A stretch of 64,000 nucleotides of DNA from the IMG/VR virus record IMGVR_UViG_3300028393_000019, positions 124,001-188,000 of that record; one strand, written 5' to 3'. The notes below the pieces were generated by a model. It was not told where the DNA came from, made no database searches, and worked only from the letters and a program-made list of their open reading frames with translations. Position 1 is the stretch's first letter. Each line of letters opens with the position of its first letter. This document shows positions 14,519 through 53,375 of the stretch, piece after piece. The position numbers were made by a program, and so were the translations under genes.

Positions 14519-15550
14519 ATGCAGATTAGAGAATTATCAAAACCAGTTACAGCTAAACAGCTTAACGAAAACTTAGCCAAACAATATGGCTACAAACTAA
14601 ACTTAGAAAAGTTTAGCGATGTGCAATTAGAAGATGCACGTAACAAGTTACGTACCAAGCTGAGTCAGCTTGAACTTAGTGAAAACTATGATGCCATCAA
14701 CGAAAATCCCGACTATCAAAAGACCAAAATCATGCTGGACTGTATCAATACAGAAATTTTAGAGCGTGAGGCAATTGCAGAGGGCACAAAAGACCTACCA
14801 GGCAATCAAGAAAAGATTGATGTTGCAAAACCAAAAGGCAAAATTGACGGCAAGGACATGGCCGCTCTACGTGCAATGAAGAAAAAGAAAATGGAAAGTG
14901 TAAATCTAGCATTAATGGTTAAAAAGGCTCGTGAGCATTCAGTTCCAACCAAGTGGATCGAATCGGCAATCAGCCGTATCAAACTAGGCGAAACAGATCA
15001 GCAAGAACTAACAGCAGAATTAACAACACGTTATGACCTAAGTGAAGGCCAAGCCAACTATATTGTATATCTAAAAGAAGGTGAGCAAACCAAGGCAGAA
15101 GTAATTATGGCCACTAAAGACATGGTGGACCAAATTACAGGCTGGTACGAAGATGTGGCTCAATTAAAATCTGAGCATCTTCTAGAACTATTAGACTCTA
15201 TAAGAGAAGCACTAGGCAGTGACGTTGCCAGCAAATATGAACAGGCAGTCAAGCCTGCACTGGATCAGATCTATTCATCAATTGAACAAGCACGTCAAGG
15301 CATATCATCAGGCCTAGCTCTAGTATCAGGTGGCGAAGCTCCTGGTATGATGGGAGCACCAGCTCCAACAGGCATGCCAGGCGAAGACGCAGGTATGGGT
15401 GGTGAAACACCTCCGATGCCCGGTGAAGCACCAGACATGGGTGCAGAAACTCCAGCACTACCAGGTGCAGAAGCAGGCCGTGAGAAGCGTGAAAGCATTG
15501 ACTACAGCCGCCGCTTAGGCATGATGTTGGCTCAATCAAAAAAAAACTAA
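14519..15550 (+). CDS. putative prohead core/scaffold-like protein ending at a slippery site
   Basis: Helical, many LxE sites, Pro/Gly/Met-rich tail; TATAAATA at 14484; ends TCA AAA AAA AAC TAA. Confidence 0.65.
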   Translation: MQIRELSKPVTAKQLNENLAKQYGYKLNLEKFSDVQLEDARNKLRTKLSQLELSENYDAINENPDYQKTKIMLDCINTEILEREAIAEGTKDLPGNQEKIDVAKPKGKIDGKDMAALRAMKKKKMESVNLALMVKKAREHSVPTKWIESAISRIKLGETDQQELTAELTTRYDLSEGQANYIVYLKEGEQTKAEVIMATKDMVDQITGWYEDVAQLKSEHLLELLDSIREALGSDVASKYEQAVKPALDQIYSSIEQARQGISSGLALVSGGEAPGMMGAPAPTGMPGEDAGMGGETPPMPGEAPDMGAETPALPGAEAGREKRESIDYSRRLGMMLAQSKKN

Positions 15551-15903
15551 ATGAAAACCTGGATCCCTTGGTAATGTTACTGAGGGATGAACAGGCCAAA
15601 GCCAATCGCGAATTTGCCGCAACTGGCAATGAAACTTCTGCTCCACTGTCGTGGAAAGCGATTAACCAACTGATCAGTGCATCAGGCAACCCAGAAGTGT
15701 CTTACGATGAGTTTGCACAACGTTGGGACAGTCAAGAGCCAGATGATCAAATACTCAAACAATTGGTAGCTAGATTTGATGGTCAGGGTCTTGTGATCAA
15801 GACCAAAGGTTCCGGTTCACAACCTGACATGGGTGAGCCCAATCCTGGAAAATCCAGTGTAGCTGCCGCGGCAGATCAAGCAACAGATCGAGCGTTTGCC
15901 TAG
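15547..15903 (+). CDS. -1 frame extension of the 14519 ORF (track ORF 15568..15903)
   Basis: CTA at 15547 is in frame with TTG 15568 (LNENLDPLVMLLRDEQ...); no clear RBS of its own. Confidence 0.6.
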   Translation, partial: LNENLDPLVMLLRDEQAKANREFAATGNETSAPLSWKAINQLISASGNPEVSYDEFAQRWDSQEPDDQILKQLVARFDGQGLVIKTKGSGSQPDMGEPNPGKSSVAAAADQATDRAFA

Positions 15904-16685: not shown

Positions 16686-18695
16686 ATGGCCGTATATCAG
16701 ATATCAAGAATACAAGTACGTCGCGGACAAGCGAATAGTGGTACAGGATTGCCACAGCTAGCATCTGGCGAAATGGCTTGGGCTATCGATACACAGCAAT
16801 TATACATCGGTAGTGGTGCTGTAAGCGAAGGCGCTCCGGCAGTCAGCAATATCCGTGTTCTTACAGCGCAGGATCTGGGTCTACAAGGTAACTTGTTGGG
16901 ACTAGCACAGTATGTGTATGGATCCAGTAACAGCTCTATTATTACAGGACCCAACGCCAACAGTCCTGTAGGACGCACTGTTAATACGAGACTGGATGAT
17001 CAAATAACCACAGCAAATTTTGGCACAATAGCAGACGGTGCCACAGATGATACCGCCGCACTACAACGTGCTATCAATCAATTGTTCCTAAACCCTAGCC
17101 AGGTCAGCTGGCAGAATACCAACAGTGCAGTCAAAACCAGGGCAGTGCTGACAATGCCGCCTGGCAATTATTATACCTCTGATACCTTGTACATACCCAG
17201 CTATACCAATCTGGTAGGAGCAGGCATAGACAAGACCATAATCAATTATCATCCCAAACAATACAGCATATCGGGCACATCAACGTATAACAATGCTATT
17301 TTGGCTGCAACAGTCGCCTCTTCAACATATGTAGGCTATATCGTTACATGCCCAGCCAGTCCTACCGCGATTCCAAACAACACTACAGTTACAGGATTTA
17401 CCGCAGGAGTAAGTTTGACACTGAGCAACAATGCGGCAGCCGGTTTATCTGGCGCTACATTTGTGTTGACCAGTCCTAAACCCGCGGTGCAGTTTGTTAA
17501 CGACAACTCCACAGCAGGCTCACCTGATCCAGTAGCTGCCAGTACCACAACACAGGCCCGCAAGATACGCATCACTGATTTGACAATCTCAACCGCAACC
17601 GGACTCAATACTTTGATGCAATGCAATTCAGTGCGTGAAAGCAGATTTGAAAATATTGGATTGAATGGCTATAATAGTCAAACGCCATTTTCTGGAATTA
17701 TCAATAACAACAGTATAGGTATAGCACTCAACAGCCCTATATCAGCTCAAACACAAGATAACATCTTTAGGAACATCAGAGCAACAGGATTGACCTATGG
17801 TGTGTATTCTTATCAGGATATTACACACTACTGCGAATTGGCAAATAACTTATTTGAGAACTGTTATTTTGCCAACAGCCTGATGGGATTCTTTTTAGGT
17901 AATGGTTACGTTTATAATATTGGTACTAGCCCTACAGGTCCAATTCAAACACAGATAGTCAATAATAAATTTTATTATATACAACAAGAGGCAATTTATA
18001 TTGCAGCCGGAACCGGAACCACTGTACAAAACTGCAAATATACCTATGTTGGTAACAATGGCGGAACCAACTTGGTAAGCACTTATCCTCAAGTGTATTT
18101 TGCGACCTATGGCAATTCATCAGTAGGTGATATCAGTGATAGAGATACTAATCTTGCCAACCCAAATACCAGTAGCAACCCAACATTTGCATTGATACCT
18201 TATGTACCTGTAGTGAGCGGACATGGTACTTATTCATACACTGGCAATTCCTCATTGTCGCTGAACTATACAGTGTCGGCTACACAGATTTTTAAATTGC
18301 CATTGACTTGGTTGTCCAGCCAAACTGTTCCCAAAGCCACTTTGTTCAGTACAGTTTCTCCTGCAGGTCCAACAGGGCAGATAATATATTCAGTACCCTA
18401 CGTCTATGCCAGCAACAAAAATTTTACCAGACAAGGCATCCTAACCATCACAGCTGATGCGGCAAATCAACAGCTACAGTTAAGCGATGAATATAACTTT
18501 GCCGGAGCCGATGCAAGTCCAAATACTACATCGTCTATTGCGACCAATTTAGATTTTCAAGCTCAGTTCCTAGACAAGAACGGAGTCCTTACTTCTATCA
18601 GTAGTTTGGCTCCTTTCTCTATAGTAGTCACCTATATCAATACCCTATCCAGTGATAGCGGCACTTTCAGCTATACATACAACTCAGTATTCTAA
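16686..18695 (+). CDS. tail spike/fibre protein with a pectate-lyase-like beta-helix
   Basis: QISRIQVRRG...LASGEMAW N-terminal domain; DGATDDTAALQRAI ... PPGNY motif; Asn-rich repeats. Confidence 0.75.
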   Translation: MAVYQISRIQVRRGQANSGTGLPQLASGEMAWAIDTQQLYIGSGAVSEGAPAVSNIRVLTAQDLGLQGNLLGLAQYVYGSSNSSIITGPNANSPVGRTVNTRLDDQITTANFGTIADGATDDTAALQRAINQLFLNPSQVSWQNTNSAVKTRAVLTMPPGNYYTSDTLYIPSYTNLVGAGIDKTIINYHPKQYSISGTSTYNNAILAATVASSTYVGYIVTCPASPTAIPNNTTVTGFTAGVSLTLSNNAAAGLSGATFVLTSPKPAVQFVNDNSTAGSPDPVAASTTTQARKIRITDLTISTATGLNTLMQCNSVRESRFENIGLNGYNSQTPFSGIINNNSIGIALNSPISAQTQDNIFRNIRATGLTYGVYSYQDITHYCELANNLFENCYFANSLMGFFLGNGYVYNIGTSPTGPIQTQIVNNKFYYIQQEAIYIAAGTGTTVQNCKYTYVGNNGGTNLVSTYPQVYFATYGNSSVGDISDRDTNLANPNTSSNPTFALIPYVPVVSGHGTYSYTGNSSLSLNYTVSATQIFKLPLTWLSSQTVPKATLFSTVSPAGPTGQIIYSVPYVYASNKNFTRQGILTITADAANQQLQLSDEYNFAGADASPNTTSSIATNLDFQAQFLDKNGVLTSISSLAPFSIVVTYINTLSSDSGTFSYTYNSVF

Positions 18696-18893: not shown

Positions 18894-21215
18894 ATGATAA
18901 AGATTACCGTAATAAAGAGAAGTGGCAACAAGGAAGATCTAGCAGTAGAAAAATGGCAAGCCCAAGTTGCAAAAGTTTGCCAAGGTATTGCCGATGTTAG
19001 TCAATCAATGATTGAGATCAAAAGTCAGCCACACTTTTATGATGGTATCACTACAGCAGAGATCGACGGCATTACACTACGTGCCATAGTAGACCTAATC
19101 GATGTAGAATCGAATCCGGATGTAGGTCACACCAATTATCAGTATGTGGCAGGCAAACAGCGTTTGTCAATGCTACGTAAAGATGTATATGGACAATATG
19201 AGGTTCCCCACCTCTACACAATCGTCAAGAAGAATGTTGATGTAGGACTGTACACTCCGGAACTGCTGGAGTGGTACACTGAAGATGATTGGAACCGAAT
19301 GAATGACATGCTGGATCATGAAAAAGATGAACAGTATGGATATGCGGCTATTGAGCAGTTGATTGAAAAATATTTGGTACGCAATCGTGCGACAAAGGAA
19401 ATTTATGAAACTCCACAAATTAGATATATTGTGGCAGCGGCTACTGTGTTCCATAAAGAAGAACCTAACAGTGCTAGGATGCGTTATATTAAAGAGTATT
19501 ATCAAGCCGCTTCAGATGGTTTGTTTACTTTGGCTACTCCTGTGCTGGCTGGTCTTGGAACTCCTACTAAGCAATTTAGTAGTTGCGTTCTTATTCGTAG
19601 CGATGATGATTTGGATTCCATTTTTGCCTCTGGTGAAATGATGGCCAAGTATGCCAGCAAACGTGCAGGCATTGGTTTAGAAATTGGTCGATTACGTCCA
19701 CTAGGTAGTCCTATCCGTGGTGGCGAAATTATGCACACTGGCATGATCCCATTCTTAAAGAAATGGTTTGGTGATCTACGCAGTTGCAGTCAAGGAGGTA
19801 TCCGTAATGCAAGTGCTACTGTGTTTTATCCCATTTGGCATCTACAGTTTGATGATCTTATTGTTCTTAAGAATAACCAAGGAACAGAAGAAACTAGGGT
19901 TCGACATATGGACTATGGAGTGGTATTGTCTGCCTTCTTCTGGAGACGATTTCGAAATAAGGAAGCTATAACTTTCTTTGATCCCAATCAAGTACCTGAC
20001 TTGTATGAAGCGTTCTACAAGAACACGCCCCTGTTTGAAGAGTTATATGTCAAATATGAAAAGCGCAAAGATCTACGTACCAAGACTATGAGTGCCGAAG
20101 AAGTATTCAAGAGCGGAATACTAAAAGAGCGTACAGATACTGGACGTATCTATCTTGTGTTCATTGACAATGTACAGAATCAAGGACCATTCGATCCTGA
20201 ATACCACACTATCTATCAAAGTAATCTCTGTTGTGAAATACTATTACCTACTAAATCTTTCAAGCGTCTTGATGATGTGGATGGCCGTATTGCTCTTTGC
20301 ACACTCGGCTCGATCAACTGGGGAGCATTCCGCAATCCAGAAGACATGCGCCGTGCTTGCCGTATTTTACAGCGTAGTCTATGCAACATACTTGACTACC
20401 AAGATTTTCTAAGTATACAGAGCAAACTCAGCAATGATGAGATACAGCCACTAGGCATTGGTGTTACTAACCTAGCCTACTGGCACGCCAAGCGTGGCCT
20501 ACGCTATGGCGAAAAAGATGCATTGCAGGACGTTAAGAGTTGGATGGAACATCAGGCCTTTTACTTGACAGAAGCCACAGTCGAACTAGCCAAAGAACGT
20601 GGTGCTTGTCAGCATAGCTCACATACACGATACGGCAAAGGCATCTTTCCCTGGGAACTTAGAGCCAAAGGTGCTGACCAGTTGGCAAACTTTGCTCCCG
20701 AACTTGACTGGGAAACACTGCGTACCAATATGAAAGAATACGGTGTGCGCAATGCTACGCTTATGGCTATTGCTCCAGTGGAGTCTAGCAGTGTTGTTAT
20801 CAATTCAACTAATGGCATAGAAATGCCAATGAGCTTGATTAGCACTAAGGAAAGCAAAGCAGGATCGTTTACACAGGTTGTTCCCGAGTATCATAAACTC
20901 AAGAACAAGTATCAAATGATGTGGGATCAAAAGGATTGTACAGGTTATTTAAAAACTGCGGCAGTGCTAGCGGCCTATGTGGATCAGAGTATCAGTACTA
21001 ACACTTTTTATAATCCAGCACACTTTGCTGATCGTAAAGTTCCAACCACATTGATTGCCAAGAACTTGATGCAAGCACAGCTATGGGGTTTAAAGACATT
21101 CTACTACAGTTTGATCAACAAAGCAGGCAGTAAACAAATAGCAGAAGAAGCTCCCACAATGTTAGAAGCTATTGATTTTGACAACGAAGAAGATTGCGAG
21201 GCATGTAAGCTATGA
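18894..21215 (+). CDS. nrdA: class Ia ribonucleotide reductase alpha subunit with ATP cone
   Basis: VIKRSG ATP cone, QFSSCVL, SNLCCEI, KTFYY, C-terminal CEAC. Confidence 0.97.
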   Translation: MIKITVIKRSGNKEDLAVEKWQAQVAKVCQGIADVSQSMIEIKSQPHFYDGITTAEIDGITLRAIVDLIDVESNPDVGHTNYQYVAGKQRLSMLRKDVYGQYEVPHLYTIVKKNVDVGLYTPELLEWYTEDDWNRMNDMLDHEKDEQYGYAAIEQLIEKYLVRNRATKEIYETPQIRYIVAAATVFHKEEPNSARMRYIKEYYQAASDGLFTLATPVLAGLGTPTKQFSSCVLIRSDDDLDSIFASGEMMAKYASKRAGIGLEIGRLRPLGSPIRGGEIMHTGMIPFLKKWFGDLRSCSQGGIRNASATVFYPIWHLQFDDLIVLKNNQGTEETRVRHMDYGVVLSAFFWRRFRNKEAITFFDPNQVPDLYEAFYKNTPLFEELYVKYEKRKDLRTKTMSAEEVFKSGILKERTDTGRIYLVFIDNVQNQGPFDPEYHTIYQSNLCCEILLPTKSFKRLDDVDGRIALCTLGSINWGAFRNPEDMRRACRILQRSLCNILDYQDFLSIQSKLSNDEIQPLGIGVTNLAYWHAKRGLRYGEKDALQDVKSWMEHQAFYLTEATVELAKERGACQHSSHTRYGKGIFPWELRAKGADQLANFAPELDWETLRTNMKEYGVRNATLMAIAPVESSSVVINSTNGIEMPMSLISTKESKAGSFTQVVPEYHKLKNKYQMMWDQKDCTGYLKTAAVLAAYVDQSISTNTFYNPAHFADRKVPTTLIAKNLMQAQLWGLKTFYYSLINKAGSKQIAEEAPTMLEAIDFDNEEDCEACKL

Positions 21216-22312
21216 GTAAAGAACAATATAATTTAAAAACAAAGACAGACTACCTTAATCGTAAGATGTTCTTAGACCCAGCGGGCCCAGTTACTATCCA
21301 ACGATTTGAAGAAGTTAAGTACAAAAAGATTGCAGACTTTGAAGCTACTGCACGTGGCTTCTTTTGGCAACCAGAAGAGATTAGTCTAAGCAAGGACTCT
21401 AACGATTTTAAAGATGCCAGCGATGCAGTCAAGCATATTTTTACCAGTAACCTACTACGCCAAACAGCTCTTGACAGTTTGCAAGGTCGCGGCCCTACAC
21501 AAGTTTTTACACCAGTGTGCAGTTTGCCCGAAGTAGAAGCACTCATGTACAACTGGGGCTTCTTTGAAACCAACATCCACAGCAAGAGCTATAGCCATAT
21601 CATTCGTAATATCTACAATGTGCCCAAAGATGTGTTTAGCACAATACACGACACAGAAGAGATTGTGGGCATGGCCTCAAGCGTGGGAAATTATTATGAT
21701 GCATTGCATGTTATAAACTGCCGCAAAGAAGCAGGCGAAAAGATCAATGAAAAAACTCATATCAAAGCAATTTGGTTAGCATTGCATGCCAGCTATGCGT
21801 TGGAAGCATTCCGCTTCATGGTTAGTTTTGCTACAAGTCTTGCAATGGTAGAGAACAAGATCTTTATTGGCAATGGCAACATCATCAGTTTGATTCTACA
21901 AGACGAACTGCTACACAAGGGTTGGACTGCCTATTTGATCAATCAAGTGATCAAAGAAGATCCGAGATTCGCTGAAGCCAAAGCAGAATGTGAAGCAGAA
22001 GTTTATGCACTGTATGCGGATGTGATACGTGAAGAAAAGGCGTGGGCAGATTACCTGTTCAAGATGGGTCCGGTGATCGGACTTAATGCGGCTATTCTCA
22101 AAGACTTTGTTGACTATACAGCAGTTGGCGCATTAAAAGATATTGGCATCAAGTACCAATCCAATGCACCTAGGTCTACTCCTATTCCTTGGTTCAATAA
22201 ACATAGCGACACCAGCAAAAAACAAACAGCATTACAAGAAAACGAATCAACTAACTATGTGATAGGTATCATGGGTGAAGGCATTGACTACGATGAGTTG
22301 CCCGTGCTATAA
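21212..22312 (+). CDS. nrdB: class Ia ribonucleotide reductase beta subunit
   Basis: FFWQPEE, ETNIHSKSY, LEAFRFMVSF, QDELLH. Confidence 0.97.
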   Translation: MSKEQYNLKTKTDYLNRKMFLDPAGPVTIQRFEEVKYKKIADFEATARGFFWQPEEISLSKDSNDFKDASDAVKHIFTSNLLRQTALDSLQGRGPTQVFTPVCSLPEVEALMYNWGFFETNIHSKSYSHIIRNIYNVPKDVFSTIHDTEEIVGMASSVGNYYDALHVINCRKEAGEKINEKTHIKAIWLALHASYALEAFRFMVSFATSLAMVENKIFIGNGNIISLILQDELLHKGWTAYLINQVIKEDPRFAEAKAECEAEVYALYADVIREEKAWADYLFKMGPVIGLNAAILKDFVDYTAVGALKDIGIKYQSNAPRSTPIPWFNKHSDTSKKQTALQENESTNYVIGIMGEGIDYDELPVL

Positions 22313-27349: not shown

Positions 27350-28501
27350 ATGATATTAGCGTATCTACTACTACTAACAGGTTTAACAATATCGGCGGTC
27401 GCAATCTACTACTCAGTGGTAGGTTTGACCGCTATCTTTTCTGCCGCGGCCATACCCATTATTATCATGGGGTCAGCTCTTGAGGTAGGTAAACTGGTGT
27501 GTGCAAGTTGGCTCAAAGCCAATTGGGAACGTGCTCCACGTTTCATGAAGTACTACATGGTCATAGCAGTTGTAGTACTGATGCTGATTACGTCAATGGG
27601 CATATTCGGATTCCTTTCAAAAGCCCACAACGATCAAACCCTAGTCAGTGGAGACGTTGGCAGTAAGATCGCAATCTATGATGAAAAAATCAAAACCGAA
27701 AAAGAGAATATTGAAGCAAACCGTAAGGCACTTAAACAGATGGATGAGGGAGTGGACCAAGTACTGGGTCGCTCAACAGATGAAAAAGGTGCCGACAAAG
27801 CTGTGGCTATGCGTCGCTCCCAGCAGAAAGAACGTGTTAGACTTCAAGCTGAAATATCACAGTCGCAGAAGTCTATCGCGGAACTTAATGATGCCCGTGC
27901 GCCTATTGCCGCCGAGGTACGTAAAGTCGAAGCAGAAGTTGGGCCAATTAAGTATATCGCGGCGTTCATCTACGGCACAGCGCCAGACGAAACAATGCTG
28001 GAACGAGCAGTAACTTGGATCATTATCCTTATTGTAGTTGTATTTGACCCATTGGCAGTTATCATGTTGTTAGCCGCACAGATGACATTTGGTTGGAAGA
28101 AAGAACAAGAACACGTACCGGAAGAAATACCAGTTGTATCGACACCAGCTGATGAAATATTGAAACAGGGTGTTACCAACAGTAGCCCTGCCGATAATAT
28201 ACCGTTGATCACAGAATACGAAGGCGTTATAGCGGCAGGAACTCCCGAAGTTTTAGACGACAAGCCTGCAGAAATTATTGAAGAAACAGAATTGGACAAA
28301 TGGAACAAAATGGTGGAAGAAGCTGAACGAGCTATTGTAGAACCTGGTCCTAGTTTAGAAGAACGTTTGGCATCCGGCGAGTCCTATGTGGACAGTGAGG
28401 GCAACGAGAATCCAGTGTACTCGGAAGAAGACGGCTCAAAAAAAAAGACCTATATGATCAAGGACCCTACGGGGCAGATCCAAGTCAAGAACAGAGAATA
28501 G
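27350..28501 (+). CDS. membrane protein with coiled coil and acidic tail; contains a slippery site
   Basis: Three N-terminal TMs, coiled coil, TM with FDPLA; TCA AAA AAA AAG at 28436-28447. Confidence 0.75.
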   Translation: MILAYLLLLTGLTISAVAIYYSVVGLTAIFSAAAIPIIIMGSALEVGKLVCASWLKANWERAPRFMKYYMVIAVVVLMLITSMGIFGFLSKAHNDQTLVSGDVGSKIAIYDEKIKTEKENIEANRKALKQMDEGVDQVLGRSTDEKGADKAVAMRRSQQKERVRLQAEISQSQKSIAELNDARAPIAAEVRKVEAEVGPIKYIAAFIYGTAPDETMLERAVTWIIILIVVVFDPLAVIMLLAAQMTFGWKKEQEHVPEEIPVVSTPADEILKQGVTNSSPADNIPLITEYEGVIAAGTPEVLDDKPAEIIEETELDKWNKMVEEAERAIVEPGPSLEERLASGESYVDSEGNENPVYSEEDGSKKKTYMIKDPTGQIQVKNRE

Positions 28502-28776
28502 AGTATGTTCAAAATGAAGAACAATCCACTGATACCATTTGGTCTAGACTTAGCGAAAGAATTGTACACAGGCCAGTAGATGAGCTATATAAAGCATACC
28601 ATGAAGGAGCATTCAAAGATTTTACAGTAGACGAGTCGGAGATTGAACTGTGTAATTTTGTCAAACAAACAATAGACACAGGGCCTAGATTCTATGACTA
28701 TGCGGCAGAAAAAACAGCATATTTTGAAAAACGAATATATGAACTTAGGAAAAATAACTTTAATAACACCCCCTGA
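28447..28776 (+). CDS. start-less 109-codon -1 frame extension of the 27350 ORF
   Basis: Open from GAC 28447 to TGA 28774-28776 (DLYDQGPYGADPSQEQRIEYVQNEEQSTDTIWSRL...); no ATG in frame; fills an otherwise empty gap. Confidence 0.6.
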   Translation, partial: DLYDQGPYGADPSQEQRIEYVQNEEQSTDTIWSRLSERIVHRPVDELYKAYHEGAFKDFTVDESEIELCNFVKQTIDTGPRFYDYAAEKTAYFEKRIYELRKNNFNNTP

Positions 28777-29155
28777 CAAATTGTTCAATAACAATTTGAG
28801 CTACCTTTTGGTCAAGCCCAGCAACTTTGTCAAATCACAATTCCAAACCATACTGAGTCATGGTCTAGAAGATTTGAATGTGTTTATATTTGACAACGAT
28901 GATACAGACATCAGTTGGCTGTTAAGTTCCAGCTATCAAGCTGATTGTATTATTATTGATGTAGACAACTGTGATCCCCAAACACACAAGTTTGTTACTC
29001 TATTGCTGATGCATCCCAATGCATACTATATGACCAAGGATGAAACAACTCCGTATCATCTTATCAGCCGTAATAGAATTTACGATCTAAATTGGATAAT
29101 AGAAAAAATCAAAGCAGAAGAGGAAGAAGGCCCAGAAGATGAACCAGAAGAATAA
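28739..29155 (+). CDS. hypothetical protein
   Basis: Likely start [13 protein letters not shown]. Confidence 0.7.
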
Positions 29156-29369
29156 AGGTACAGGTGTCACTGTCAAGGACGGAGAGAACATCAATCAGGC
29201 CTTGCGTAGATTCAAACGTAAGATTGAGGATTCAGGGCTTTTGGAAGATTTACGGGCTAAAGAATTCTACGAAAAACCTACCACTGAACGCAAACGTAAA
29301 AAAGGTGCGGCCCAAGCACGTTGGAAAAAGAAGCTGAAAGATCAGCAATTACCCAAAAAAATGTATTGA
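29139..29369 (+). CDS. rpsU: 30S ribosomal protein bS21
   Basis: [13 protein letters not shown]...EFYEKPT..RKRKK. Confidence 0.93.
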
Positions 29370-29399: not shown

Positions 29400-29981
29400 A
29401 TGCTTACTGACATTATGATAGATTTGGAGACTCTAAATACAACTCCAGACGCAACCATCCTAACTATAGGTGCTGTTAAATTTGATCCGTTTGGATTAGA
29501 ATTAAAAGAACCTGCAATGAAAAGCTTCTACTGTAAAGTAGATGTTGATTCGTGTGATAGGATCGGTCTTACCACTAGCGATGACACAATAGAATGGTGG
29601 GCAAGTCAAAGCAAGGAAGCCCAAGAAGCGGCTTTTGATCCCGAAGGAAGAATTGATATTGAAGAAGCGTTTGCGCAACTGTATAAATTCTGTTGGGGCG
29701 CAAAACGTGTATGGTCAAACGGTTCATGTTTTGATATTGTGATCTGCGAACATGTGTTCCGTAAAATCAATCGAGCTTGCCCATGGAAGTTTTGGGAAGT
29801 ACGTGATGTACGCACTGCTTTTGATCTAGGCATCAATCCTCAGCGTCCTCCTATTACAGCTCACCATGCGCTAGAAGATGCATGGAATCAAGCAGTGGGT
29901 ATTCAGAATGTCTACAATACTCTACGCACTTCGACTACATATGAAGGTAAGATGCTACAACCGTTTATTAATCAGAGGTAA
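29400..29981 (+). CDS. DEDD 3'-5' exonuclease
   Basis: MIDLET, WSNG..FD, RDVRT, HHALEDA. Confidence 0.88.
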   Translation: MLTDIMIDLETLNTTPDATILTIGAVKFDPFGLELKEPAMKSFYCKVDVDSCDRIGLTTSDDTIEWWASQSKEAQEAAFDPEGRIDIEEAFAQLYKFCWGAKRVWSNGSCFDIVICEHVFRKINRACPWKFWEVRDVRTAFDLGINPQRPPITAHHALEDAWNQAVGIQNVYNTLRTSTTYEGKMLQPFINQR

Positions 29982-30357: not shown

Positions 30358-32271
30358 ATGAGCAAAATCATCGGTATCGATTTAGGTACAACAAATAGCT
30401 GTGTGGCAATCCTGGAAAACGGAGTTGCCAAAGTAATTGAAAACAGCGAAGGTGCGAGAACAACACCATCAATCATTGCATATACCAAGGACGAGATCCT
30501 AGTAGGTGCAACAGCAAAACGACAAGCAGTCACAAACCCAAAGAATACAATCTACGCCAGCAAGCGCCTTATTGGTCGCAAGTTTGACGAGAAAGAAGTA
30601 CAAAAAGACATCGACTTGATGCCTTATTCAATTATCAAAGCTGACAACGGTGACGCTTGGATTGAAGCCAACGGCGAGAAACTTGCTCCACAGCAGGTGT
30701 CAGCTGAAGTGCTACGTAAAATGAAAAAGACAGCAGAAGACTATCTGGGTAAAGAAGTTACACAGGCAGTTATCACTGTGCCTGCTTACTTCAACGACAG
30801 CCAACGTCAAGCAACCAAAGACGCAGGACGTATCGCTGGACTAGAAGTTCTACGTATCATCAATGAGCCAACAGCGGCCGCATTGGCATATGGTGTAGAC
30901 AAGCAAGACAAGAAAGATCGTAAGATCGCTGTGTATGACTTGGGTGGTGGTACATTTGACATCTCCATTATTGAAATTGCCAACATTGACGGCGACAAGC
31001 AAATTGAAGTGTTGAGTACAAACGGTGACACATTCCTAGGTGGTGAAGACTTTGACCAAGTTCTTATGGATCATTTGGTAGCAGAGTTTAAGAAAGACAA
31101 TGGTATTGACCTAAAGCAAGACGTGCTGGCTTTACAGCGTTTGAAAGAGTCTGCTGAAAAGGCCAAGATTGAATTGTCTAGTGCCGCAAGTACAACTGTT
31201 AACTTGCCATACATCACAGCAGATGCCAGTGGTCCAAAGCACATGAATGTGACTATCAGCCGTGCCAAGTTTGAGCAAATGGTTGAGAAACTGATCGAGC
31301 GTTCAATTGAGCCATGTAAGATTGCTATGAATGATGCCAAAGTTACAGCCGTAGATATCGACGAAGTTATCCTAGTTGGCGGCCAAACACGTATGCCCAA
31401 AGTGCAAGAAGCAGTTGAGAAACTGTTTGGCAAGGCACCACGCAAAGATGTCAACCCAGACGAAGCAGTGGCCGCAGGTGCCGCAGTACAAGGCGCTGTT
31501 CTAGCAGGCGACAAGACAGACGTGCTGTTGTTGGACGTGACTCCATTGACATTGGGTATTGAAACAATGGGCGGAGTGTTTACCAAGCTGATCAGCAAAA
31601 ATACAACTATACCAACCAAACACTCACAAACATTCTCAACAGCAGAAGACAATCAACCAGCTGTGACAATCAAAGTTGCACAGGGCGAGCGTGAGTTGTT
31701 TAAGTATAATAAGATGCTAGGTGAGTTCAATCTAGAGGGTATTGACCCTGCACCACGCGGTATGCCACAGATTGAAGTCACACTAGATTTAGATGCAAAC
31801 GGTATCTTGAATGTAAGTGCCAAAAATAAAACCACTGGCAAAGAAAACAAGATAACTATCAAGTCTGATTCCGGACTAACTGAAGCTGAAATCCAACGTA
31901 TGGTTCGTGAAGCTGAAGAAAATGCCGAATCAGACAAGAAGGCAGCAGAATTGATCGGAGCACGTAATCAAGCTGAAGGTACTACACACAGTATCAAGAA
32001 AGACTATGAAACGTATAAAGATCAATTGACTGAGGAAGAAAGAACCAAATTTGACGAAGCAGTAAAAGCAGTGGAAACTGCTTGTGCTGGTGAAGACAAA
32101 GAGGCGATTGACAAATCAGTACAGACTTTCTTTGAAGCCGCTGGTCCGGTTATGACTAAAAAACAAGCCGCTGAATCAACGACAGACGAAACCCCAGCTC
32201 AAAGCCAATCAGCTCAAGAGCAAACGGTTGATGCTAGCTTCACAGAAGTTGACAAAGAAGAAAAGAAGTAA
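30358..32271 (+). CDS. dnaK: molecular chaperone DnaK
   Basis: [27 protein letters not shown]. Confidence 0.98.
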
Positions 32272-48420: not shown

Positions 48421-48488
48421 CACAAGGTCGCGTAAAATCAGTCAAAGCTAGAGCCAAACGTGCAACTCGTAAAGCACGTAACAAGTAA
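48417..48488 (+). CDS. 23-aa highly basic peptide
   Basis: AGGAG RBS, ATGA overlap; MTQGRVKSVKARAKRATRKARNK. Confidence 0.6.
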   Translation: MTQGRVKSVKARAKRATRKARNK

Positions 48489-48494
48489 TAGCAA

Positions 48495-48841
48495 AAGAAT
48501 TGTTGTACAAGCCTTAAAGTAAGGCATTCTGGACGCGGGTTCGACTCCCGCCAGGTCCACCATAAGCATATTAGGTCGTTGAGTTAAAAAGTCGCATGTG
48601 ATGCGCTCAGACTAAAATAGTATGCTTTTGATGGGCCTGCCATGGTTTCGACAGGGTGAGATAGGATAAAGGTCAACACGTGGGGTCACGTAAAATACAA
48701 ATAAAGTAAATGCAAAAGCAAATACATTCGAGTATTTCCAAGTTCCTGTAACATTAGCTACTGCTAATGATGCAGAATTTGCAATCGCAGCCTAAGAAAC
48801 TGCACTCGCGAGGTAGGACTTACCTTGTCATCAAAACAACC
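48495..48841 (+). ncRNA. ssrA: two-piece (circularly permuted) tmRNA
   Basis: Acceptor piece ends GCGGGTTCGACTCCCGC-CAGGTCC-ACCA (48562); coding piece starts GGGCCTG (48633) giving G3:U70; tag frame ends ANDAEFAIAA-stop (48795); outer ends approximate. Confidence 0.9.
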
Positions 48842-48868
48842 AAAAAGGCACTTTCGAGTGCCTTTTTT
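48842..48868 (+). terminator. intrinsic terminator after tmRNA
   Basis: AAAAAGGCACT-TTCG-AGTGCCTTTTTT. Confidence 0.88.
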
Positions 48869-48869
48869 A

Positions 48870-48898
48870 TTGACCAGTAAACAATTTGCATATATAAT
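48870..48898 (+). promoter_or_regulatory. sigma70-type promoter
   Basis: TTGACC-17-TATAAT. Confidence 0.7.
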
Positions 48899-48944
48899 AG
48901 GGTACTGTGTAAAAACAGTCATTTTAATTAAAAGGAAGTAAAAC

Positions 48945-49397
48945 ATGAAGAAAATTGCAATCGCAACCCTATTGGCCCTAGCGGCCGCAACAGCCAGTGC
49001 TGTAGAAGTTGGCGTCAACGGATCGTACGATTACGGTTCACCAACCCAACGTCCAGGTGCAGGTATCACAATCGGTCAGAAATATGACAAGTTTGGTGTC
49101 ACTGCTGGATTTGATCGTTACTCAAAAGGTACAGATCAAAACAAGTGGACACTGGTTGGTTCATATGATGTGTATTCAGTCGGTGCCGCAACGTTCGCAG
49201 TCAAAGCTGGTGCCGCATATTTGGACAACTATGGTAATGTTGCTGATGGTTATGCTGGTCTAGTTGGCACAGGTGTCAGCTATGCAGTTGCTAAGAATGT
49301 TGCATTGACAGCAGACTATCGCTATCAGTTCGGCCAGTCACGTGTTAACCAATTTGATGGCAACACAATTTCTACAGGCATCAAGGTCTCATTCTAA
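48945..49397 (+). CDS. small outer-membrane beta-barrel protein (OmpA/Ail-like)
   Basis: Signal peptide, alternating beta strands, C-terminal Phe. Confidence 0.8.
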   Translation: MKKIAIATLLALAAATASAVEVGVNGSYDYGSPTQRPGAGITIGQKYDKFGVTAGFDRYSKGTDQNKWTLVGSYDVYSVGAATFAVKAGAAYLDNYGNVADGYAGLVGTGVSYAVAKNVALTADYRYQFGQSRVNQFDGNTISTGIKVSF

Positions 49398-49417
49398 TTT
49401 TTAATTAGAAAAACATC

Positions 49418-49440
49418 AAGGGACCTTAGGGTCCTTTTTT
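49418..49440 (+). terminator. intrinsic terminator
   Basis: AAGGGACC-TTAG-GGTCCTTTTTT. Confidence 0.85.
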
Positions 49441-49487
49441 GTTAATGGAAAATATTGTGGCGATTTTGCCACATTATCACTAGGTTC

Positions 49488-49516
49488 TTGACAAGTGATA
49501 TAAATACATATATAAT
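49488..49516 (+). promoter_or_regulatory. sigma70-type promoter P1 of the tRNA region (TATAAATA within the spacer)
   Basis: TTGACA-17-TATAAT. Confidence 0.8.
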
Positions 49517-49587
49517 AGAAGCTGTGTTAGAGATGCTTCGTTAAAAAAGTTTGTTGTCCAAAAACAACAAAAAGATTTACAAAGTAG

Positions 49588-49616
49588 TTGACAACAACGT
49601 CGAGAGGCGTTATAAT
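49588..49616 (+). promoter_or_regulatory. sigma70-type promoter P2 of the tRNA region
   Basis: TTGACA-17-TATAAT, 100 bp after P1. Confidence 0.85.
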
Positions 49617-49675
49617 TAACACATGAACTAGCAATTCCGCTAGTAAAAACAAAAAGGTTTAAAAGAGAAAACAAA

Positions 49676-49825
49676 ATGCAATCTTGCAATAGACATCATC
49701 AGTTTAATACGATGCCCAAACAGGTAGGCGTTATAGCCTCTTATTGGTCAGCGATTAACGGCGGAAGTCTGTCATTAGATCGTACACCAGAGATTACAAG
49801 GGTCCGGGAGGGCTGGGATGACTAG
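49676..49825 (+). CDS. putative 49-aa attenuator leader peptide containing all 20 amino acids
   Basis: MQSCNRHHQFNTMPKQVGVIASYWSAINGGSLSLDRTPEITRVREGWDD; A-rich initiation region; overlaps the antiterminator strand. Confidence 0.65.
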   Translation: MQSCNRHHQFNTMPKQVGVIASYWSAINGGSLSLDRTPEITRVREGWDD

Positions 49826-49893
49826 GTAACAACTTAGAAACATTTCAAAACTTCAAGGACCCTAGGATTAAAACCCTGGGGTTTTTTGTTTTT
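49799..49893 (+). terminator. attenuator: antiterminator (49799-49805/49857-49863) versus terminator (49857-49866/49875-49884 + U-tract)
   Basis: AGGGTCC is complementary to GGACCCT; GGACCCTAGG pairs with CCTGGGGTTT, followed by TTTGTTTTT. Confidence 0.75.
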
Positions 49894-49905
49894 AGGAAAG
49901 GAAAA

Positions 49906-50082
49906 ATGGAACAGATAGATTACGAAAAATTAAATCAACGCATTGTTGAACAGGCTTATGAAACTGCTTTTGGTCCTACATTGGATAAAGAACAGCTTCA
50001 AAAACTTATTCAAGATAAGTTTGAACGTGCTAGAAAATATCACGAAGCGTTAGCGAAAGCACCGACGTTCAGTGTAAACTAG
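49906..50082 (+). CDS. 58-aa hypothetical protein directly after the attenuator (not in ORF track)
   Basis: AGGAAAGG RBS; MEQIDYEKLNQRIVEQAYETAFG... Confidence 0.6.
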   Translation: MEQIDYEKLNQRIVEQAYETAFGPTLDKEQLQKLIQDKFERARKYHEALAKAPTFSVN

Positions 50083-50088
50083 TACAAC

Positions 50089-50258
50089 GTGTGAAGATAC
50101 CAGTAACGAGGACTGGGCCCTGCACGTAAAACATGGGGCGAACGGGCGGCCTATCGGATGGAACTCCTCTTCTGGAGCTAAAAATGGTAGCGTATCGAAG
50201 CATTCTCGGGCCGATAGAGGCAAGTGGGTTCATCCATGTAGAATGCTTCGATACACAC
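50089..50258 (+). ncRNA. candidate structured RNA
   Basis: Perfect 15-bp stem 50192-50206/50240-50254; CTATCGG 50151 pairs with CCGATAG 50211 inside its loop; further hairpins. Confidence 0.55.
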
Positions 50259-50283
50259 TTTCCAACACTACCTGAAATAGTGC

Positions 50284-50312
50284 TTGACATAGTCAACGGA
50301 GAGTGTTAAAAT
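50284..50312 (+). promoter_or_regulatory. sigma70-type promoter before tRNA-Tyr
   Basis: TTGACA-17-TAAAAT. Confidence 0.6.
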
Positions 50313-50320
50313 TAAAATCT

Positions 50321-50409
50321 GGAAGTGTGCGCTGAATTGGTTGAAGGCAACGGACTGTAAATCCGCCACATAAGAAACATTGTTGGTTCGAATCCAACCA
50401 CTTCCACCA
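50321..50409 (+). tRNA. tRNA-Tyr(GTA)
   Basis: Cloverleaf, long variable arm, encoded CCA. Confidence 0.92.
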
Positions 50410-50414
50410 AATTT

Positions 50415-50489
50415 GGTCCTGTCATATAGTGGTTATTATACCGGCCTGTCTAGTCGGATATCGGGGTTCGATTCCCCGCAGGATCGCCA
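50415..50489 (+). tRNA. tRNA-Asp(GTC)
   Basis: CCGGC-CTGTCTA-GTCGG arm, CCA. Confidence 0.92.
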
Positions 50490-50497
50490 AGTATATT

Positions 50498-50574
50498 CGG
50501 AGTGTAGCGCAGTCTGGTAGCGCACCTGGTTTGGGACCAGGGGGTCCAAGGTTCGAATCCTTGTACTCCGACCA
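50498..50574 (+). tRNA. tRNA-Pro(TGG)
   Basis: CCTGG-TTTGGGA-CCAGG arm, CCA. Confidence 0.95.
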
Positions 50575-50581
50575 ATTTTAT

Positions 50582-50656
50582 GCACGGTTCGTCTATCGGT
50601 TAGGACACTGGCCTTTCACGTCAGTAAGACGGGTTCGATTCCCGTACCGTGTACCA
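50582..50656 (+). tRNA. tRNA-Glu(TTC)
   Basis: CTGGC-CTTTCAC-GTCAG arm, CCA. Confidence 0.93.
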
Positions 50657-50659
50657 AGA

Positions 50660-50841
50660 ACGTTCCGCTTTGTTAGCGGATACTGTGACCCGCAGGATGG
50701 GAAGTGAGGTGACTCTCAAGGGTGGTTCTAGTCTTACCGAACTAGCGTTAGCAACACGATAGCGGTCCCTGTCGGGAAGCGGGTGGAGGGCATGCGTGAT
50801 GGACCTAGTCCTGATGTGCTATAATTACCGCCGAGGGATGT
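50660..50841 (+). ncRNA. candidate structured RNA
   Basis: GC-rich; closing ACGTTCC/GGGATGT; ACCCGC 50688/GCGGGT 50779; several hairpins. Confidence 0.55.
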
Positions 50842-50851
50842 CAGAGCTTTT

Positions 50852-50925
50852 CCTCTTGTAGTTAAATGGTATAACAGTCGGCTGATAACCGGCCATTACA
50901 AGTTCGATTCTTGTCGAGAGGACCA
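50852..50925 (+). tRNA. tRNA-Ile(GAT)
   Basis: GTCGG-CTGATAA-CCGGC arm, CCA. Confidence 0.92.
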
Positions 50926-50953
50926 ATTTTTAACAAAGAACAAAGGAAATGTT

Positions 50954-51331
50954 ATGTCATATAGTGACTGGAATAACTCTGCTAAAATAGCAGACATGGT
51001 AGGTAAAACTTTTACAAGTGTAAAAGCAGATGGCAACGAGTTGGTGTTTGAAAACAGCGTGGATCGTTATGTGTTCTTTCATGCACAAGATTGTTGCGAA
51101 CATGTGCGCATTGAAGACATCGCGGGCGACTTGAGCGACCTAGAAGGTGAACCTTTAGTAATAGCAGACGAAGTTGAAGGTGAAAGCCCAGCTGACTTTG
51201 AAGCATACGAAAGTTACACTTGGACATTTTACAAGTTCGCTACTCGCAAGGGCTATGTGGACGTGAGATGGCTAGGAGAAAGCAACGGGTACTACAGCGA
51301 AAGCGTAAACCTAGGATACGAAACAGTTTAA
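50954..51331 (+). CDS. acidic hypothetical phage protein
   Basis: AAGGA RBS; HAQDCCE ... WTFYK ... SNGYYSE. Confidence 0.8.
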   Translation: MSYSDWNNSAKIADMVGKTFTSVKADGNELVFENSVDRYVFFHAQDCCEHVRIEDIAGDLSDLEGEPLVIADEVEGESPADFEAYESYTWTFYKFATRKGYVDVRWLGESNGYYSESVNLGYETV

Positions 51332-51381
51332 TTTTATAAAAGGAGATCTGTCATGACCAGTGACAAGAGTGATAAGATGAT

Positions 51382-51456
51382 GGGGGTATAACTTAACGGC
51401 TAAAGTAGCGGGCTTTTAACCCGTAAATCAGAGTTCGATTCTCTGTGCCCCTACCA
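51382..51456 (+). tRNA. tRNA-Lys(TTT)
   Basis: GCGGG-CTTTTAA-CCCGT arm, CCA. Confidence 0.92.
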
Positions 51457-51553
51457 TATAAAAACATACTGGATCTTCTAGTGGACTAAGACGCTGGCAA
51501 ATAGGTCGGTGAACGTGGTGTTCAAATCCCACTCTAGTGTGTTTCTATATGGT
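51453..51553 (+). ncRNA. tRNA-like element on a ~20-bp closing stem, lacking CCA
   Basis: D-like arm TCTT..AGTGG..AAGA, T-like arm GTGG-TGTTCAAATC-CCAC, non-canonical anticodon loop. Confidence 0.55.
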
Positions 51554-51631
51554 ATTACTTGTAGATAAATCGAGATTGTTTTTTAATCTCTTTAATCTTT
51601 TTCCTATACTTGAAACGGATGTATAAAGATT

Positions 51632-52435: not shown

Positions 52436-52462
52436 AGTAAAATATTTATTATAATTTTTTAC

Positions 52463-52538
52463 AGTAGAGTAGCATAGCGGCTAATGCACCACCTTCATAC
52501 GGTGTTTATCGTGGGTTCGAGTCCCACCTCTACTACCA
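52463..52538 (+). tRNA. tRNA-Met(CAT) (elongator Met, or Ile2 if lysidine-modified)
   Basis: CACC-TTCATAC-GGTG arm, paired 1-72, CCA. Confidence 0.88.
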
Positions 52539-52542
52539 AATT

Positions 52543-52618
52543 GGAAGTTTAGCTCAGCTGGTAGAGCGTCTGCCTTACACGCAGAATGTCGGCGGTTCGA
52601 TCCCGTCAACTTCCACCA
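52543..52618 (+). tRNA. tRNA-Val(TAC)
   Basis: TCTGC-CTTACAC-GCAGA arm, CCA. Confidence 0.95.
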
Positions 52619-52624
52619 AACTGT

Positions 52625-52698: not shown

Positions 52699-52704
52699 AT
52701 CAAT

Positions 52705-52780: not shown

Positions 52781-52785
52781 AACAT

Positions 52786-52861: not shown

Positions 52862-52864
52862 AGT

Positions 52865-53368: not shown

Positions 53369-53375
53369 TCTTTAT

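What the first reader, a model, noticed from the sequence alone, without database searches (positions are those of the whole stretch)
15536..15903. Programmed -1 frameshift extending a head/scaffold-like protein
Seen: ORF 14519 ends TCA AAA AAA AAC TAA, with slippery heptamer A AAA AAC at 15541-15547. The -1 frame reads on without a stop (LNENLDPLVMLLRDEQ...) into track ORF 15568..15903, which has no clear RBS. A strong hairpin starts about 10 nt downstream (ATCCCTTGGTA 15563-15573 / TACTGAGGGAT 15578-15588, extended by CCTG/CAGG). Established: X XXY YYZ plus a 3' stem is the canonical -1 frameshift signal. Inference: short and long isoforms are made at a fixed ratio, in a gene that does not look like the usual tail-assembly chaperone. 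Transcriptional slippage on A9 is an alternative mechanism.
Basis: partly seen in the sequence, partly recalled or inferred. Interest (0 to 1): 0.75.

Follow-up and report, generated by a model that had tools for sequence, protein, structure and literature searches.

The report
Conserved -1 recoding site, jumbo phage
A run of nine A's at the very end of a gene of an uncultured freshwater giant phage lets part of its expression slip back one base and add a folded 118-residue domain to the protein. The signal is kept letter for letter in all related phages sampled, and a second gene of the same genome uses the same device.

Summary
ORF 14519..15550 ends TCA AAA AAA AAC TAA, and the -1 frame runs on to 15903.

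- **Conservation of the signal.** In 57 distinct IMG/VR contexts and 64 metagenome contexts (54-100% protein identity) the DNA is always (N)NA AAA AAA AAN TAA, with at least 9 A's. Other conserved Lys codons of the same gene mix AAA and AAG freely.
- **The -1 ORF.** It encodes a conserved domain that folds confidently. In 45 of 57 relatives it has no start codon before its first conserved motif. An assembly error and a separate gene are therefore excluded.
- **Stem-loop.** A stem-loop with covariation follows the site, but its distance varies (10 nt in the window; the core lies 15-27 nt away in relatives).
- **Second site.** The genome's only other A9 run (28438-28446, same phase) sits in another gene. 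It opens a conserved, start-less 109-codon -1 extension, also conserved in relatives, with no stem-loop.
- **Mechanism.** Ribosomal -1 frameshifting (about 0.5) and RNA polymerase slippage on A9 (about 0.38) could not be separated. Only assembled RNA contigs were available.
- **Function.** The gene is not a tail-assembly chaperone. The protein is helical with unknown function, and "scaffold-like" is unproven.

This is a new member of a known kind of recoding.

The parts
14519..15550 (+). Zero-frame gene for the short isoform (343 aa). It has a conserved N-terminal part, long helices, a disordered Pro/Gly/Met-rich linker, and a conserved basic C-terminal helix ending SKKN.
   Evidence: more than 2,100 homologs of 320-361 aa, all ending SKK[KN]; AF2 all-helical, pLDDT 61.
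15536..15550 (+). Shift cassette TCA AAA AAA AAC TAA. It holds the A9 run 15538-15546, the in-phase heptamer A_AAA_AAC 15541-15547, and the zero-frame stop TAA 15548-15550 directly behind it.
   Evidence: Invariant (N)NA AAA AAA AAN TAA in 57 + 64 distinct related contexts. Lys codons elsewhere in the gene vary AAA/AAG.
15558..15595 (+). RNA stem-loop inside the -1 coding sequence. Outer stem is 15558-61 with 15592-95; inner stem is 15563-73 with 15578-88; the loop is AUGU.
   Evidence: -19.3 kcal/mol, z -4.8. In 52 relatives 75-77% of cells pair against 29-47% in slid controls. One pair takes six pair types (CG, AU, UA, UG, GU, GC), and the residue encoded opposite the Pro codon (R, M, K, A or T) changes with that codon's third base.
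15547..15903 (+). -1 frame extension of 118 codons plus TAG. It is a compact alpha/beta domain (residues about 7-88) followed by a disordered tail that ends in a conserved motif (consensus MAKRAT). Joined to 14519-15546/7 it gives a long isoform of 461 aa.
   Evidence: AF2 pLDDT about 90 over residues 10-88, pTM 0.62. 45 of 57 relatives have no ATG/GTG/TTG before the (D/E)PL motif.
27350..28501 (+). Second recoded gene, zero frame (383 aa; N-terminal membrane segments and a coiled coil).
   Evidence: 293 related stretches in viral contigs.
28436..28447 (+). Second shift cassette TCA AAA AAA AAG (A9 at 28438-28446), in the same phase as the first. There is no adjacent stop and no downstream structure.
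   Evidence: Among 57 distinct related contexts: A9+G 51, A8 (TCT AAA AAA AAG) 4, A10 1, A11 1. Alifold finds 0 pairs; z -0.9.
28447..28776 (+). -1 frame extension of the second gene (109 codons plus stop). It gives a long isoform of about 475 aa.
   Evidence: the ORF listing finds no ORF of at least 60 aa with a common start codon in this frame. Conserved protein alignment A6, 58% mean column identity. Contig L120 carries A10, which reads as one in-frame 520-aa fusion.

Best explanation
This is a programmed -1 recoding site.

Short form (shown from sequence): most expression of gene 14519..15550 ends at the TAA directly behind the A run and gives the 343-aa protein.

Long form (inferred): a fraction shifts one base back on TC-A-AAA-AAA-AAC and continues to 15903. 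This gives a 461-aa isoform in which the conserved C-terminal helix runs straight into a folded 118-residue extension.

Mechanism I commit to: the shift is made mainly on the ribosome.
- Lys/Asn tRNAs re-pair in the -1 frame on A_AAA_AAN. G is at N in about 80% of relatives, which makes the dnaX-type A_AAA_AAG.
- The slowly decoded adjacent stop codon favours the shift.
- The stem-loop 10 nt downstream also favours it. It sits at the mRNA entrance when AAN is in the P site and TAA in the A site.
- RNA polymerase slippage on the A9 run very probably adds to the yield.

Status of the steps:
- Shown: the cassette, the open and conserved -1 frame without its own start, and the covarying stem.
- Inferred: that the long protein is made, at what ratio, and at which level the slip occurs.
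- The same device at 28436-28447 serves a second, unrelated gene.

Probabilities: that -1 recoding of some kind operates here, about 0.9. That the ribosome is the main site of slippage, about 0.5.
For: - Cassette invariance: 57 distinct IMG/VR and 64 metagenome contexts at 54-100% protein identity all read (N)NA AAA AAA AAN TAA.
- Internal control: in the same sequences the other conserved Lys columns carry 8-24 AAG out of 45-50, while the first Lys codon of the run is AAA in 50/50.
- Frames: -1 is open 299-362 nt downstream in all; +1 closes within 16 nt.
- The -1 product is conserved from the first codon after the run and folds with pLDDT about 90.
- Own start: 45/57 have no ATG/GTG/TTG before the conserved motif, and 14/57 have none in 40 codons.
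- Phase and N: the heptamer is in phase at both sites and in all relatives. N is G 40, C 6, A 4, T 0 of 50.
- Stem-loop with compensatory changes that override the encoded amino acid. Median dG is -19.4 and median z is -3.4 across 53 relatives.
- The phage carries tRNA-Lys(UUU) and no tRNA-Lys(CUU). That is the situation in which A_AAA_AAG is most shift-prone in E. coli (PMC5009743, read).
- At site 2, four lineages have A8 but keep A_AAA_AAG and the intact extension.
Against: - The base before the eight A's that the Lys codons and the heptamer account for is always A at site 1 (TCA, GCA, CCA or CAA). Selection is therefore on at least 9 A's, which the classic two-tRNA model does not need. Nine is the length typical of bacterial transcriptional slippage (PMC1088944).
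- The core stem lies 15-27 nt, and the extended stem 11-23 nt, from the heptamer. It is weak or absent in about 15-25% of relatives.
- Site 2 has no conserved structure.
- No protein or read-level evidence: RNA contigs show only A9, and contigs drop minor variants.
Confidence: 0.5

Rival explanations
1. Programmed transcriptional slippage. The RNA polymerase realigns on the A9/T9 hybrid and makes a share of mRNAs with A10. Ordinary translation of these reads through into the -1 frame. The ribosome plays no special part, and the stem-loop has another role.
For: - At least 9 A's are kept in every site-1 context, including the wobble base of the preceding codon, whatever residue that codon encodes.
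- The only two A9 runs of the genome are the two recoding sites. A8 and T8 runs are depleted: 2 found, against about 14 that I extrapolate from the 49 runs of 7.
- Site 2 has no stimulatory structure.
- Stem spacing at site 1 varies.
- Precedent: 9A/9T sites in IS elements and Thermus dnaX, with 8A variants in homologous IS copies (PMC1088944; PMC5009743).
- One relative's assembly carries A10 at site 2.
Against: - A covarying stem-loop just downstream of site 1 has no role in this model.
- The invariant adjacent TAA and the preference for G at N are not required by it.
- RNA contigs spanning the run show A9 only, which is weak evidence because contigs hide minor forms.
Confidence: 0.38
2. There is no recoding. 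The downstream ORF is a separate small gene translated from its own (possibly non-canonical) start, or by termination-reinitiation after the TAA.
For: - Gene callers list it as separate proteins of 48-134 aa (118 aa in L164).
- 12 of 57 relatives have an ATG or GTG shortly after the stop.
- The window has TTG 15568 and ATG 15574.
Against: - 45/57 have no common start before the conserved N-terminal motif, and 14/57 have none in 40 codons.
- This model does not explain the synonymous-site invariance of the A run, nor the same start-less arrangement at site 2.
- The window's candidate starts are buried in the stem.
- Shine-Dalgarno motifs are common in this genome (AGGA in 28% of upstream regions against 4% background), but none is conserved here.
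Confidence: 0.05
3. The slip is at the DNA level: an assembly or sequencing error at a homopolymer, or replication slippage (phase variation) that gives A9 and A10 genomes in the population.
For: - Homopolymers are prone to indels.
- L120 carries A10 at site 2.
Against: - The same A9(N) frame arrangement appears in many independent assemblies from different samples, studies and years.
- A10 or A11 at site 1 arises only through base changes next to the run (at N, or in the preceding codon in one case), never through an extra base that changes the frame.
- The DNA contig of run X1 spans the site without change.
Confidence: 0.04

Closest known systems
E. coli dnaX tau/gamma and IS3/IS911-type orfA-orfB: -1 ribosomal frameshifting on A_AAA_AAG with a 3' stem-loop
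   Same: In-phase A_AAA_AAG (AAC or AAA in a minority). A single tRNA-Lys(UUU) is available. There is a downstream stem-loop. Two products come from one gene.
   Different: - Here the run is always at least 9 A's, not A6G.
- The zero-frame stop directly abuts the heptamer.
- The stem is 10-27 nt away rather than about 6, and no upstream Shine-Dalgarno stimulator was seen.
- The shift lengthens the product, whereas in dnaX it shortens it.
- The gene families are unrelated.
Thermus thermophilus dnaX, 9A/9T IS elements, Shigella spa13/mxiE: programmed transcriptional slippage
   Same: - A conserved run of nine A's.
- 8A variants occur in some homologs (site 2), as in Deinococcus/Nostoc IS copies (PMC1088944).
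- No need for RNA structure (site 2).
- Genome-wide avoidance of such runs elsewhere.
   Different: - RNA length heterogeneity is not shown here.
- Site 1 carries a covarying downstream stem and an invariant adjacent stop, which slippage does not need.
Phage lambda G/GT and the conserved tail-assembly-chaperone frameshift of tailed phages
   Same: A -1 shift near the 3' end of a phage gene adds a C-terminal domain to a minor fraction of the product. The site is conserved across a large phage group.
   Different: - The gene is not between a tail tube and a tape measure. Its neighbours are small unknown ORFs, a PD-(D/E)XK exonuclease, a pectate-lyase-like fibre and ribonucleotide reductase.
- It has no chaperone family hit.
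- The short form is 343 aa, not about 100-140.
T7 gene 10A/10B (capsid protein extended by -1 frameshift); B. subtilis cdd (-1 shift at CGA AAG next to the stop). Both recalled from my own knowledge, not tested here.
   Same: A C-terminal extension of a putative structural protein by a -1 shift close to the stop (T7). The shift site directly abuts the stop codon (cdd).
   Different: No sequence or fold relation to capsid proteins. The slippery sequence is different. cdd relies on an upstream Shine-Dalgarno element.

Membership tests
-1 programmed ribosomal frameshift cassette (X_XXY_YYZ type) | Slippery heptamer X_XXY_YYZ in phase with the zero frame | tested here: met
   A_AAA_AAC at 15541-15547; A_AAA_AAN in all relatives at both sites.
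-1 programmed ribosomal frameshift cassette (X_XXY_YYZ type) | The -1 ORF overlaps the site, is conserved as protein, and lacks its own initiation signal | tested here: met
   for site 2.
-1 programmed ribosomal frameshift cassette (X_XXY_YYZ type) | Suppressed synonymous variation at the shift site | tested here: met
   The run's first Lys codon is AAA in 50/50, while 9 other conserved Lys columns all vary. The A run is unbroken in every distinct context.
-1 programmed ribosomal frameshift cassette (X_XXY_YYZ type) | 3' stimulatory RNA structure about 5-9 nt from the heptamer | tested here: inconclusive
   The stem with covariation is real. The spacer is 10 nt in the window and 11-27 nt in relatives, and the stem is absent in some. 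None exists at site 2.
-1 programmed ribosomal frameshift cassette (X_XXY_YYZ type) | Trans-frame protein made from an unaltered mRNA | not testable with these tools
   Needs proteomics or a reporter together with RNA sequencing.
Programmed transcriptional slippage | Homopolymeric A or T run of about 9 or more, conserved in length | tested here: met
   At least A9 in all site-1 contexts. At site 2: A9 51, A8 4, A10 1, A11 1.
Programmed transcriptional slippage | The RNA population holds extra or missing A's that the DNA lacks | tested here: inconclusive
   Only assembled contigs of three metatranscriptomes could be laid. One spans the run as A9; minor forms are not kept in contigs.
Tail assembly chaperone G/GT frameshift | Position between major tail/tube gene and tape measure gene; chaperone family membership | tested here: not met
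   Neighbours are unknown small ORFs, an exonuclease, a fibre and ribonucleotide reductase. No Pfam or PHROG chaperone hit.
   - One weak PHROG hit: phrog_14154 'virion structural protein', E 5.6e-8 over 90 residues.
- All-helical low-confidence model.
- BFVD hits only to uncharacterised phage proteins, TM about 0.23.
- The neighbourhood is not a head module.

The most novel reading that the evidence does not exclude
A large clade of uncultured freshwater jumbo phages uses one portable cassette, (N)NA AAA AAA AAG, as a general device to append optional C-terminal domains to unrelated proteins. At least two genes per genome carry it. The cassette is read at both levels, by RNA polymerase slippage and by ribosomal -1 shift. 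The covarying stem-loop at site 1 would be a tuning or autoregulatory element, possibly bound by the winged-helix-like domain it helps to encode.
Probability: 0.12. Interest if true: 0.7.

Novelty: new member of a known kind. Interest (0 to 1): 0.55.

Why it matters
- **Annotation.** Automatic annotation splits these genes into a 343-aa protein and a truncated orphan ORF. A family of more than 2,100 proteins and its partner domain are therefore mis-described in public catalogues of huge phages. The same holds for the second gene.
- **Recoding outside tail chaperones.** The two sites are strongly supported examples in tailed phages, by comparative evidence. They occur in a lineage with its own tRNA set, a tmRNA-like gene and ribosomal protein bS21.
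- **A test case for mechanism.** Site 1 has A9 plus an adjacent stop and a stem. Site 2 has A9 alone. Together they form a natural pair for separating ribosomal from polymerase slippage.
- **Limits.** It is not a new principle, and the function of the proteins is unknown.

Tried and rejected
- **Cultured phages.** blastn and tblastn of the region and of both ORFs against 50,697 phage records gave no protein match and one short DNA hit.
- **Family searches.** Pfam found nothing for either part. PHROGs gave one weak hit.
- **Natural in-frame fusions at site 1.** An HMMER search of 1.84 billion representatives with the extension found none. It found only short called ORFs and two larger proteins (463 and 771 aa) that carry the domain at their N-terminus.
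- **Myb/SANT lead for the extension.** Two eukaryotic Myb-repeat proteins hit at 8e-7 and 2e-4, but only 2 of 52 members reach E 0.018 in Pfam. Kept as a lead only.
- **Fold searches of the extension.** Foldseek on PDB had nothing below E 0.5. VIA gave best Z 4.8. The lists are dominated by winged-helix domains but lie below the tool's own trust level. The best BFVD hit is an uncharacterised protein at 5e-4.
- **Atlas feature search.** It returned only unnamed viral clusters.
- **Homology between the two extensions.** hhalign probability is 0.4%, so rejected.
- **Conserved structure after site 2.** None found.
- **RNA evidence.** Three metatranscriptomes hold the gene, but only as contigs. One spans the run as A9. 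All three have contig ends within 45 nt of the run, which low depth (about 3-9) can explain. This does not decide the mechanism.
- **Phase count of A6G in long ORFs.** Numbers are too small to use.
- **The two A8 runs of the genome.** Both lie in stretches without long ORFs and are not recoding sites.

Full report
**Source and observation.** The window is bases 124001-188000 of a 265,680-bp IMG/VR virus contig with estimated completeness 72%. Relatives are on contigs of up to 345-387 kb from freshwater and lake samples. This is therefore an uncultured freshwater jumbo phage. ORF 14519..15550 ends TCA AAA AAA AAC TAA, with A9 at 15538-15546 and the in-phase heptamer A_AAA_AAC at 15541-15547. 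The -1 frame is open from 15505 to the TAG at 15901-15903. The stem-loop folds at -19.3 kcal/mol, z -4.8. Its inner stem starts at 15563, and four outer pairs start at 15558, 10 nt behind the heptamer.

**Is it more than chance?** The genome (42% G+C, 31% A) has exactly two A9 runs, nothing longer, and no T run of 8 or more. There are 49 A or T runs of length 7 but only two of length 8. That is a sharp cut-off, expected if longer runs are harmful. Both A9 runs lie where a -1 frame of about 110 codons opens.

**Conservation of the cassette.** The 343-aa protein has more than 2,100 homologs. The 120 listed are 320-361 aa, and all 24 that were aligned end SKK followed by K or N.
- In 80 IMG/VR loci (57 distinct contexts, 54-100% protein identity) the DNA is always TCA AAA AAA AAN TAA.
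- In 80 metagenome loci (64 distinct contexts, partly the same phages) it is again at least A9 followed by TAA. The preceding codon is TCA, or once each GCA, CCA and CAA, so it always ends in A.
- N is G 40, C 6, A 4, T 0 among 50 distinct genes.
- The same 50 genes serve as an internal control. Nine other conserved Lys columns all mix AAA with 8-24 AAG, while the first Lys codon of the run is AAA in 50/50. Other conserved Ser columns also vary.

The sequences are related by descent, so the counts are not independent, but the control columns share that descent. An assembly error is excluded because many independent assemblies agree. A10 or A11 arises only through base changes next to the run, never through an extra base that changes the frame.

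**The -1 ORF is part of the same protein.**
- Downstream of the run the -1 frame stays open for 299-362 nt in every locus, while the +1 frame closes within 16 nt.
- Its translation is conserved from the first codon after the run: a hydrophobic residue, then a conserved E, then (D/E)PL, then conserved W, Y, F and RW positions and an FDG-G motif, and finally a terminal motif with consensus MAKRAT.
- AlphaFold with this alignment gives a compact alpha/beta domain with pLDDT about 90 over residues 10-88 and pTM 0.62, followed by a disordered tail.
- In 45 of 57 loci there is no ATG, GTG or TTG between the run and the (D/E)PL motif. In 14 there is none within 40 codons.
- Gene callers therefore produce N-terminally truncated ORFs of 48-134 aa.
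- Shine-Dalgarno motifs are enriched before genes in this genome, but none is conserved here. In the window the only candidate starts lie in the stem.

A separate gene is thus very unlikely.

**The stem-loop.** I anchored 52 distinct sequences on the (D/E)PL codons.
- An 8-bp core, extended by 3-5 further pairs, is paired in 75-77% of cells. The figure is 29-47% when the 3' partner is slid by 1-3 columns. The covariation score is 0.20-0.21 against 0.11 in shuffles, with 0 of 500 shuffles reaching it.
- The clearest pair joins the third base of the Pro codon to the middle base of the codon five positions on. It takes the forms CG, AU, UA, UG, GU and GC, and the encoded residue changes (R, M, K, A, T) to keep the pair. 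The constraint therefore acts on the nucleic acid.
- G-U pairs argue for RNA rather than DNA.
- Insertions of 3-12 nt between the run and the stem put the core 15-27 nt (extended stem 11-23 nt) from the heptamer. Some 15-25% of relatives have a different stem or a weak one.
- Across 53 distinct relatives the 66 nt after the run fold with median -19.4 kcal/mol and median z -3.4.

**A second site.**
- The other A9 run (28438-28446) lies in ORF 27350..28501 as TCA AAA AAA AAG ACC, in the same phase.
- The zero frame ends 18 codons later. The -1 frame continues for 109 codons to 28776, with no common start codon that would give an ORF of 60 aa or more.
- In 57 distinct related contexts the site is A9+G 51 times, TCT AAA AAA AAG (A8) 4 times, A11 once through a G-to-A change, and A10 once.
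- The A10 contig (L120) reads as a single in-frame 520-aa fusion whose C-terminal part matches the window's -1 extension.
- The extension is a conserved protein with 58% mean column identity. It is unrelated to the first extension (hhalign probability 0.4%).
- No conserved RNA structure follows this site.

**Mechanism.** Both known routes fit, and on A9 followed by G they give the same protein.

For the ribosome:
- the in-phase heptamer everywhere, mostly the A_AAA_AAG form that is the most shift-prone in E. coli (PMC5009743);
- a phage tRNA-Lys(UUU) without a CUU partner;
- the invariant adjacent stop;
- the covarying stem. In the commonest arrangement it sits where the mRNA enters the ribosome when AAN is in the P site and the stop is in the A site.

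For the polymerase:
- selection for a ninth A that the two-tRNA model does not need. Nine is the length at which bacterial genomes avoid such runs, and the length used by IS elements and Thermus dnaX, with 8A variants in some copies (PMC1088944);
- no structure at site 2;
- the variable stem distance;
- the avoidance of long runs elsewhere in the genome.

A three-tRNA slip that includes the E site would also explain the ninth A. I put the ribosome as the main site at about 0.5 and the polymerase at about 0.38, and both probably contribute.

Public metatranscriptomes hold the gene (runs X6, X9, X19), on both sides of the site. Only contigs could be laid. One RNA contig spans the run as A9, and one from a relative spans A9+G. 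Minor forms would not be kept in contigs.

**What the proteins are.**
- The 343-aa protein is predicted all-helical, with two disordered stretches and a conserved basic C-terminal helix.
- It has one weak PHROG hit to a 'virion structural protein' family.
- BFVD matches are to uncharacterised phage proteins, with faint ones to jumbo phages PaBG, Atu_ph07 and RaK2.
- Gene order (small ORFs, this gene, its extension, a PD-(D/E)XK exonuclease, a pectate-lyase-like fibre, ribonucleotide reductase) is kept in a 368-kb relative. It is not a tail-chaperone or head module.
- The extension resembles winged-helix domains only weakly: best Z 4.8, Foldseek E above 0.5.
- Function is unknown. 'Scaffold-like' is a guess.

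**Comparison and novelty.** The device works like the dnaX or IS A_AAA_AAG frameshift or the 9A transcriptional slippage sites. It has the same outcome as lambda G/GT or T7 10A/10B, a minority isoform with an added C-terminal domain. It fails the tests for a tail-assembly chaperone. It is a new, very well conserved member of a known kind of recoding, in two new gene families. I found no paper describing it in two full-text searches.

Noticed in passing
window 28436-28776 (gene 27350..28501): Second -1 recoding site with the same TCA AAA AAA AAG cassette and phase. It adds a conserved, start-less 109-codon extension to a membrane/coiled-coil protein, and is conserved in about 57 distinct relatives.
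   Followed up: yes
L120:2706-2715: One relative's assembly has A10 instead of A9 at the second site, so the two frames read as a single 520-aa ORF. This could be a true variant, population heterogeneity, or an assembly choice.
   Followed up: partly
whole genome G000 (window = 124001-188000): Homopolymers stop sharply at length 7: 26 A7 and 23 T7 runs, but only two A8, no T8, and two A9 (the recoding sites). The two A8 runs (genome 99602 and 100544) lie where no frame is open for more than 70 codons.
   Followed up: partly
window 29139-29369: Phage-encoded ribosomal protein bS21 (Pfam Ribosomal_S21, E 1e-19), next to an Rv2179c-like 3'-5' exoribonuclease (29400-29981).
   Followed up: no
window 48470-57130: ARAGORN finds a tmRNA-like gene (48470-48886) and an array of 28 tRNA genes (50321-57130). 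The array includes tRNA-Lys(UUU), Asn(GUU), Ser(UGA), Val(UAC) and Leu(UAG), which are the tRNAs that read the shift site and the first -1 codons. There is no tRNA-Lys(CUU).
   Followed up: partly
window 30358-32271; 18894-22312: A full-length Hsp70/DnaK homolog (Pfam HSP70, E 1e-255) and class I ribonucleotide reductase large and small subunits.
   Followed up: partly
proteins P0175 (463 aa) and P0177 (771 aa): The extension domain of site 1 also occurs at the N-terminus of larger uncharacterised proteins without Pfam or PHROG hits. It behaves as a mobile module.
   Followed up: partly
window 15500-15700, RNA runs X6, X9, X19: In all three metatranscriptomes the assembled contigs end within about 45 nt of the A run (at 15519, 15561 and 15502). 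X6 resumes at 15701, while the DNA contig runs through. Low depth, run-length heterogeneity or the stem could each cause this.
   Followed up: no
window 16686-18695 and 59308-61380: Two large proteins begin with an Mtd_N (major tropism determinant N-terminal) domain. The first also has a pectate-lyase-like beta-helix. They are likely receptor-binding fibres.
   Followed up: no
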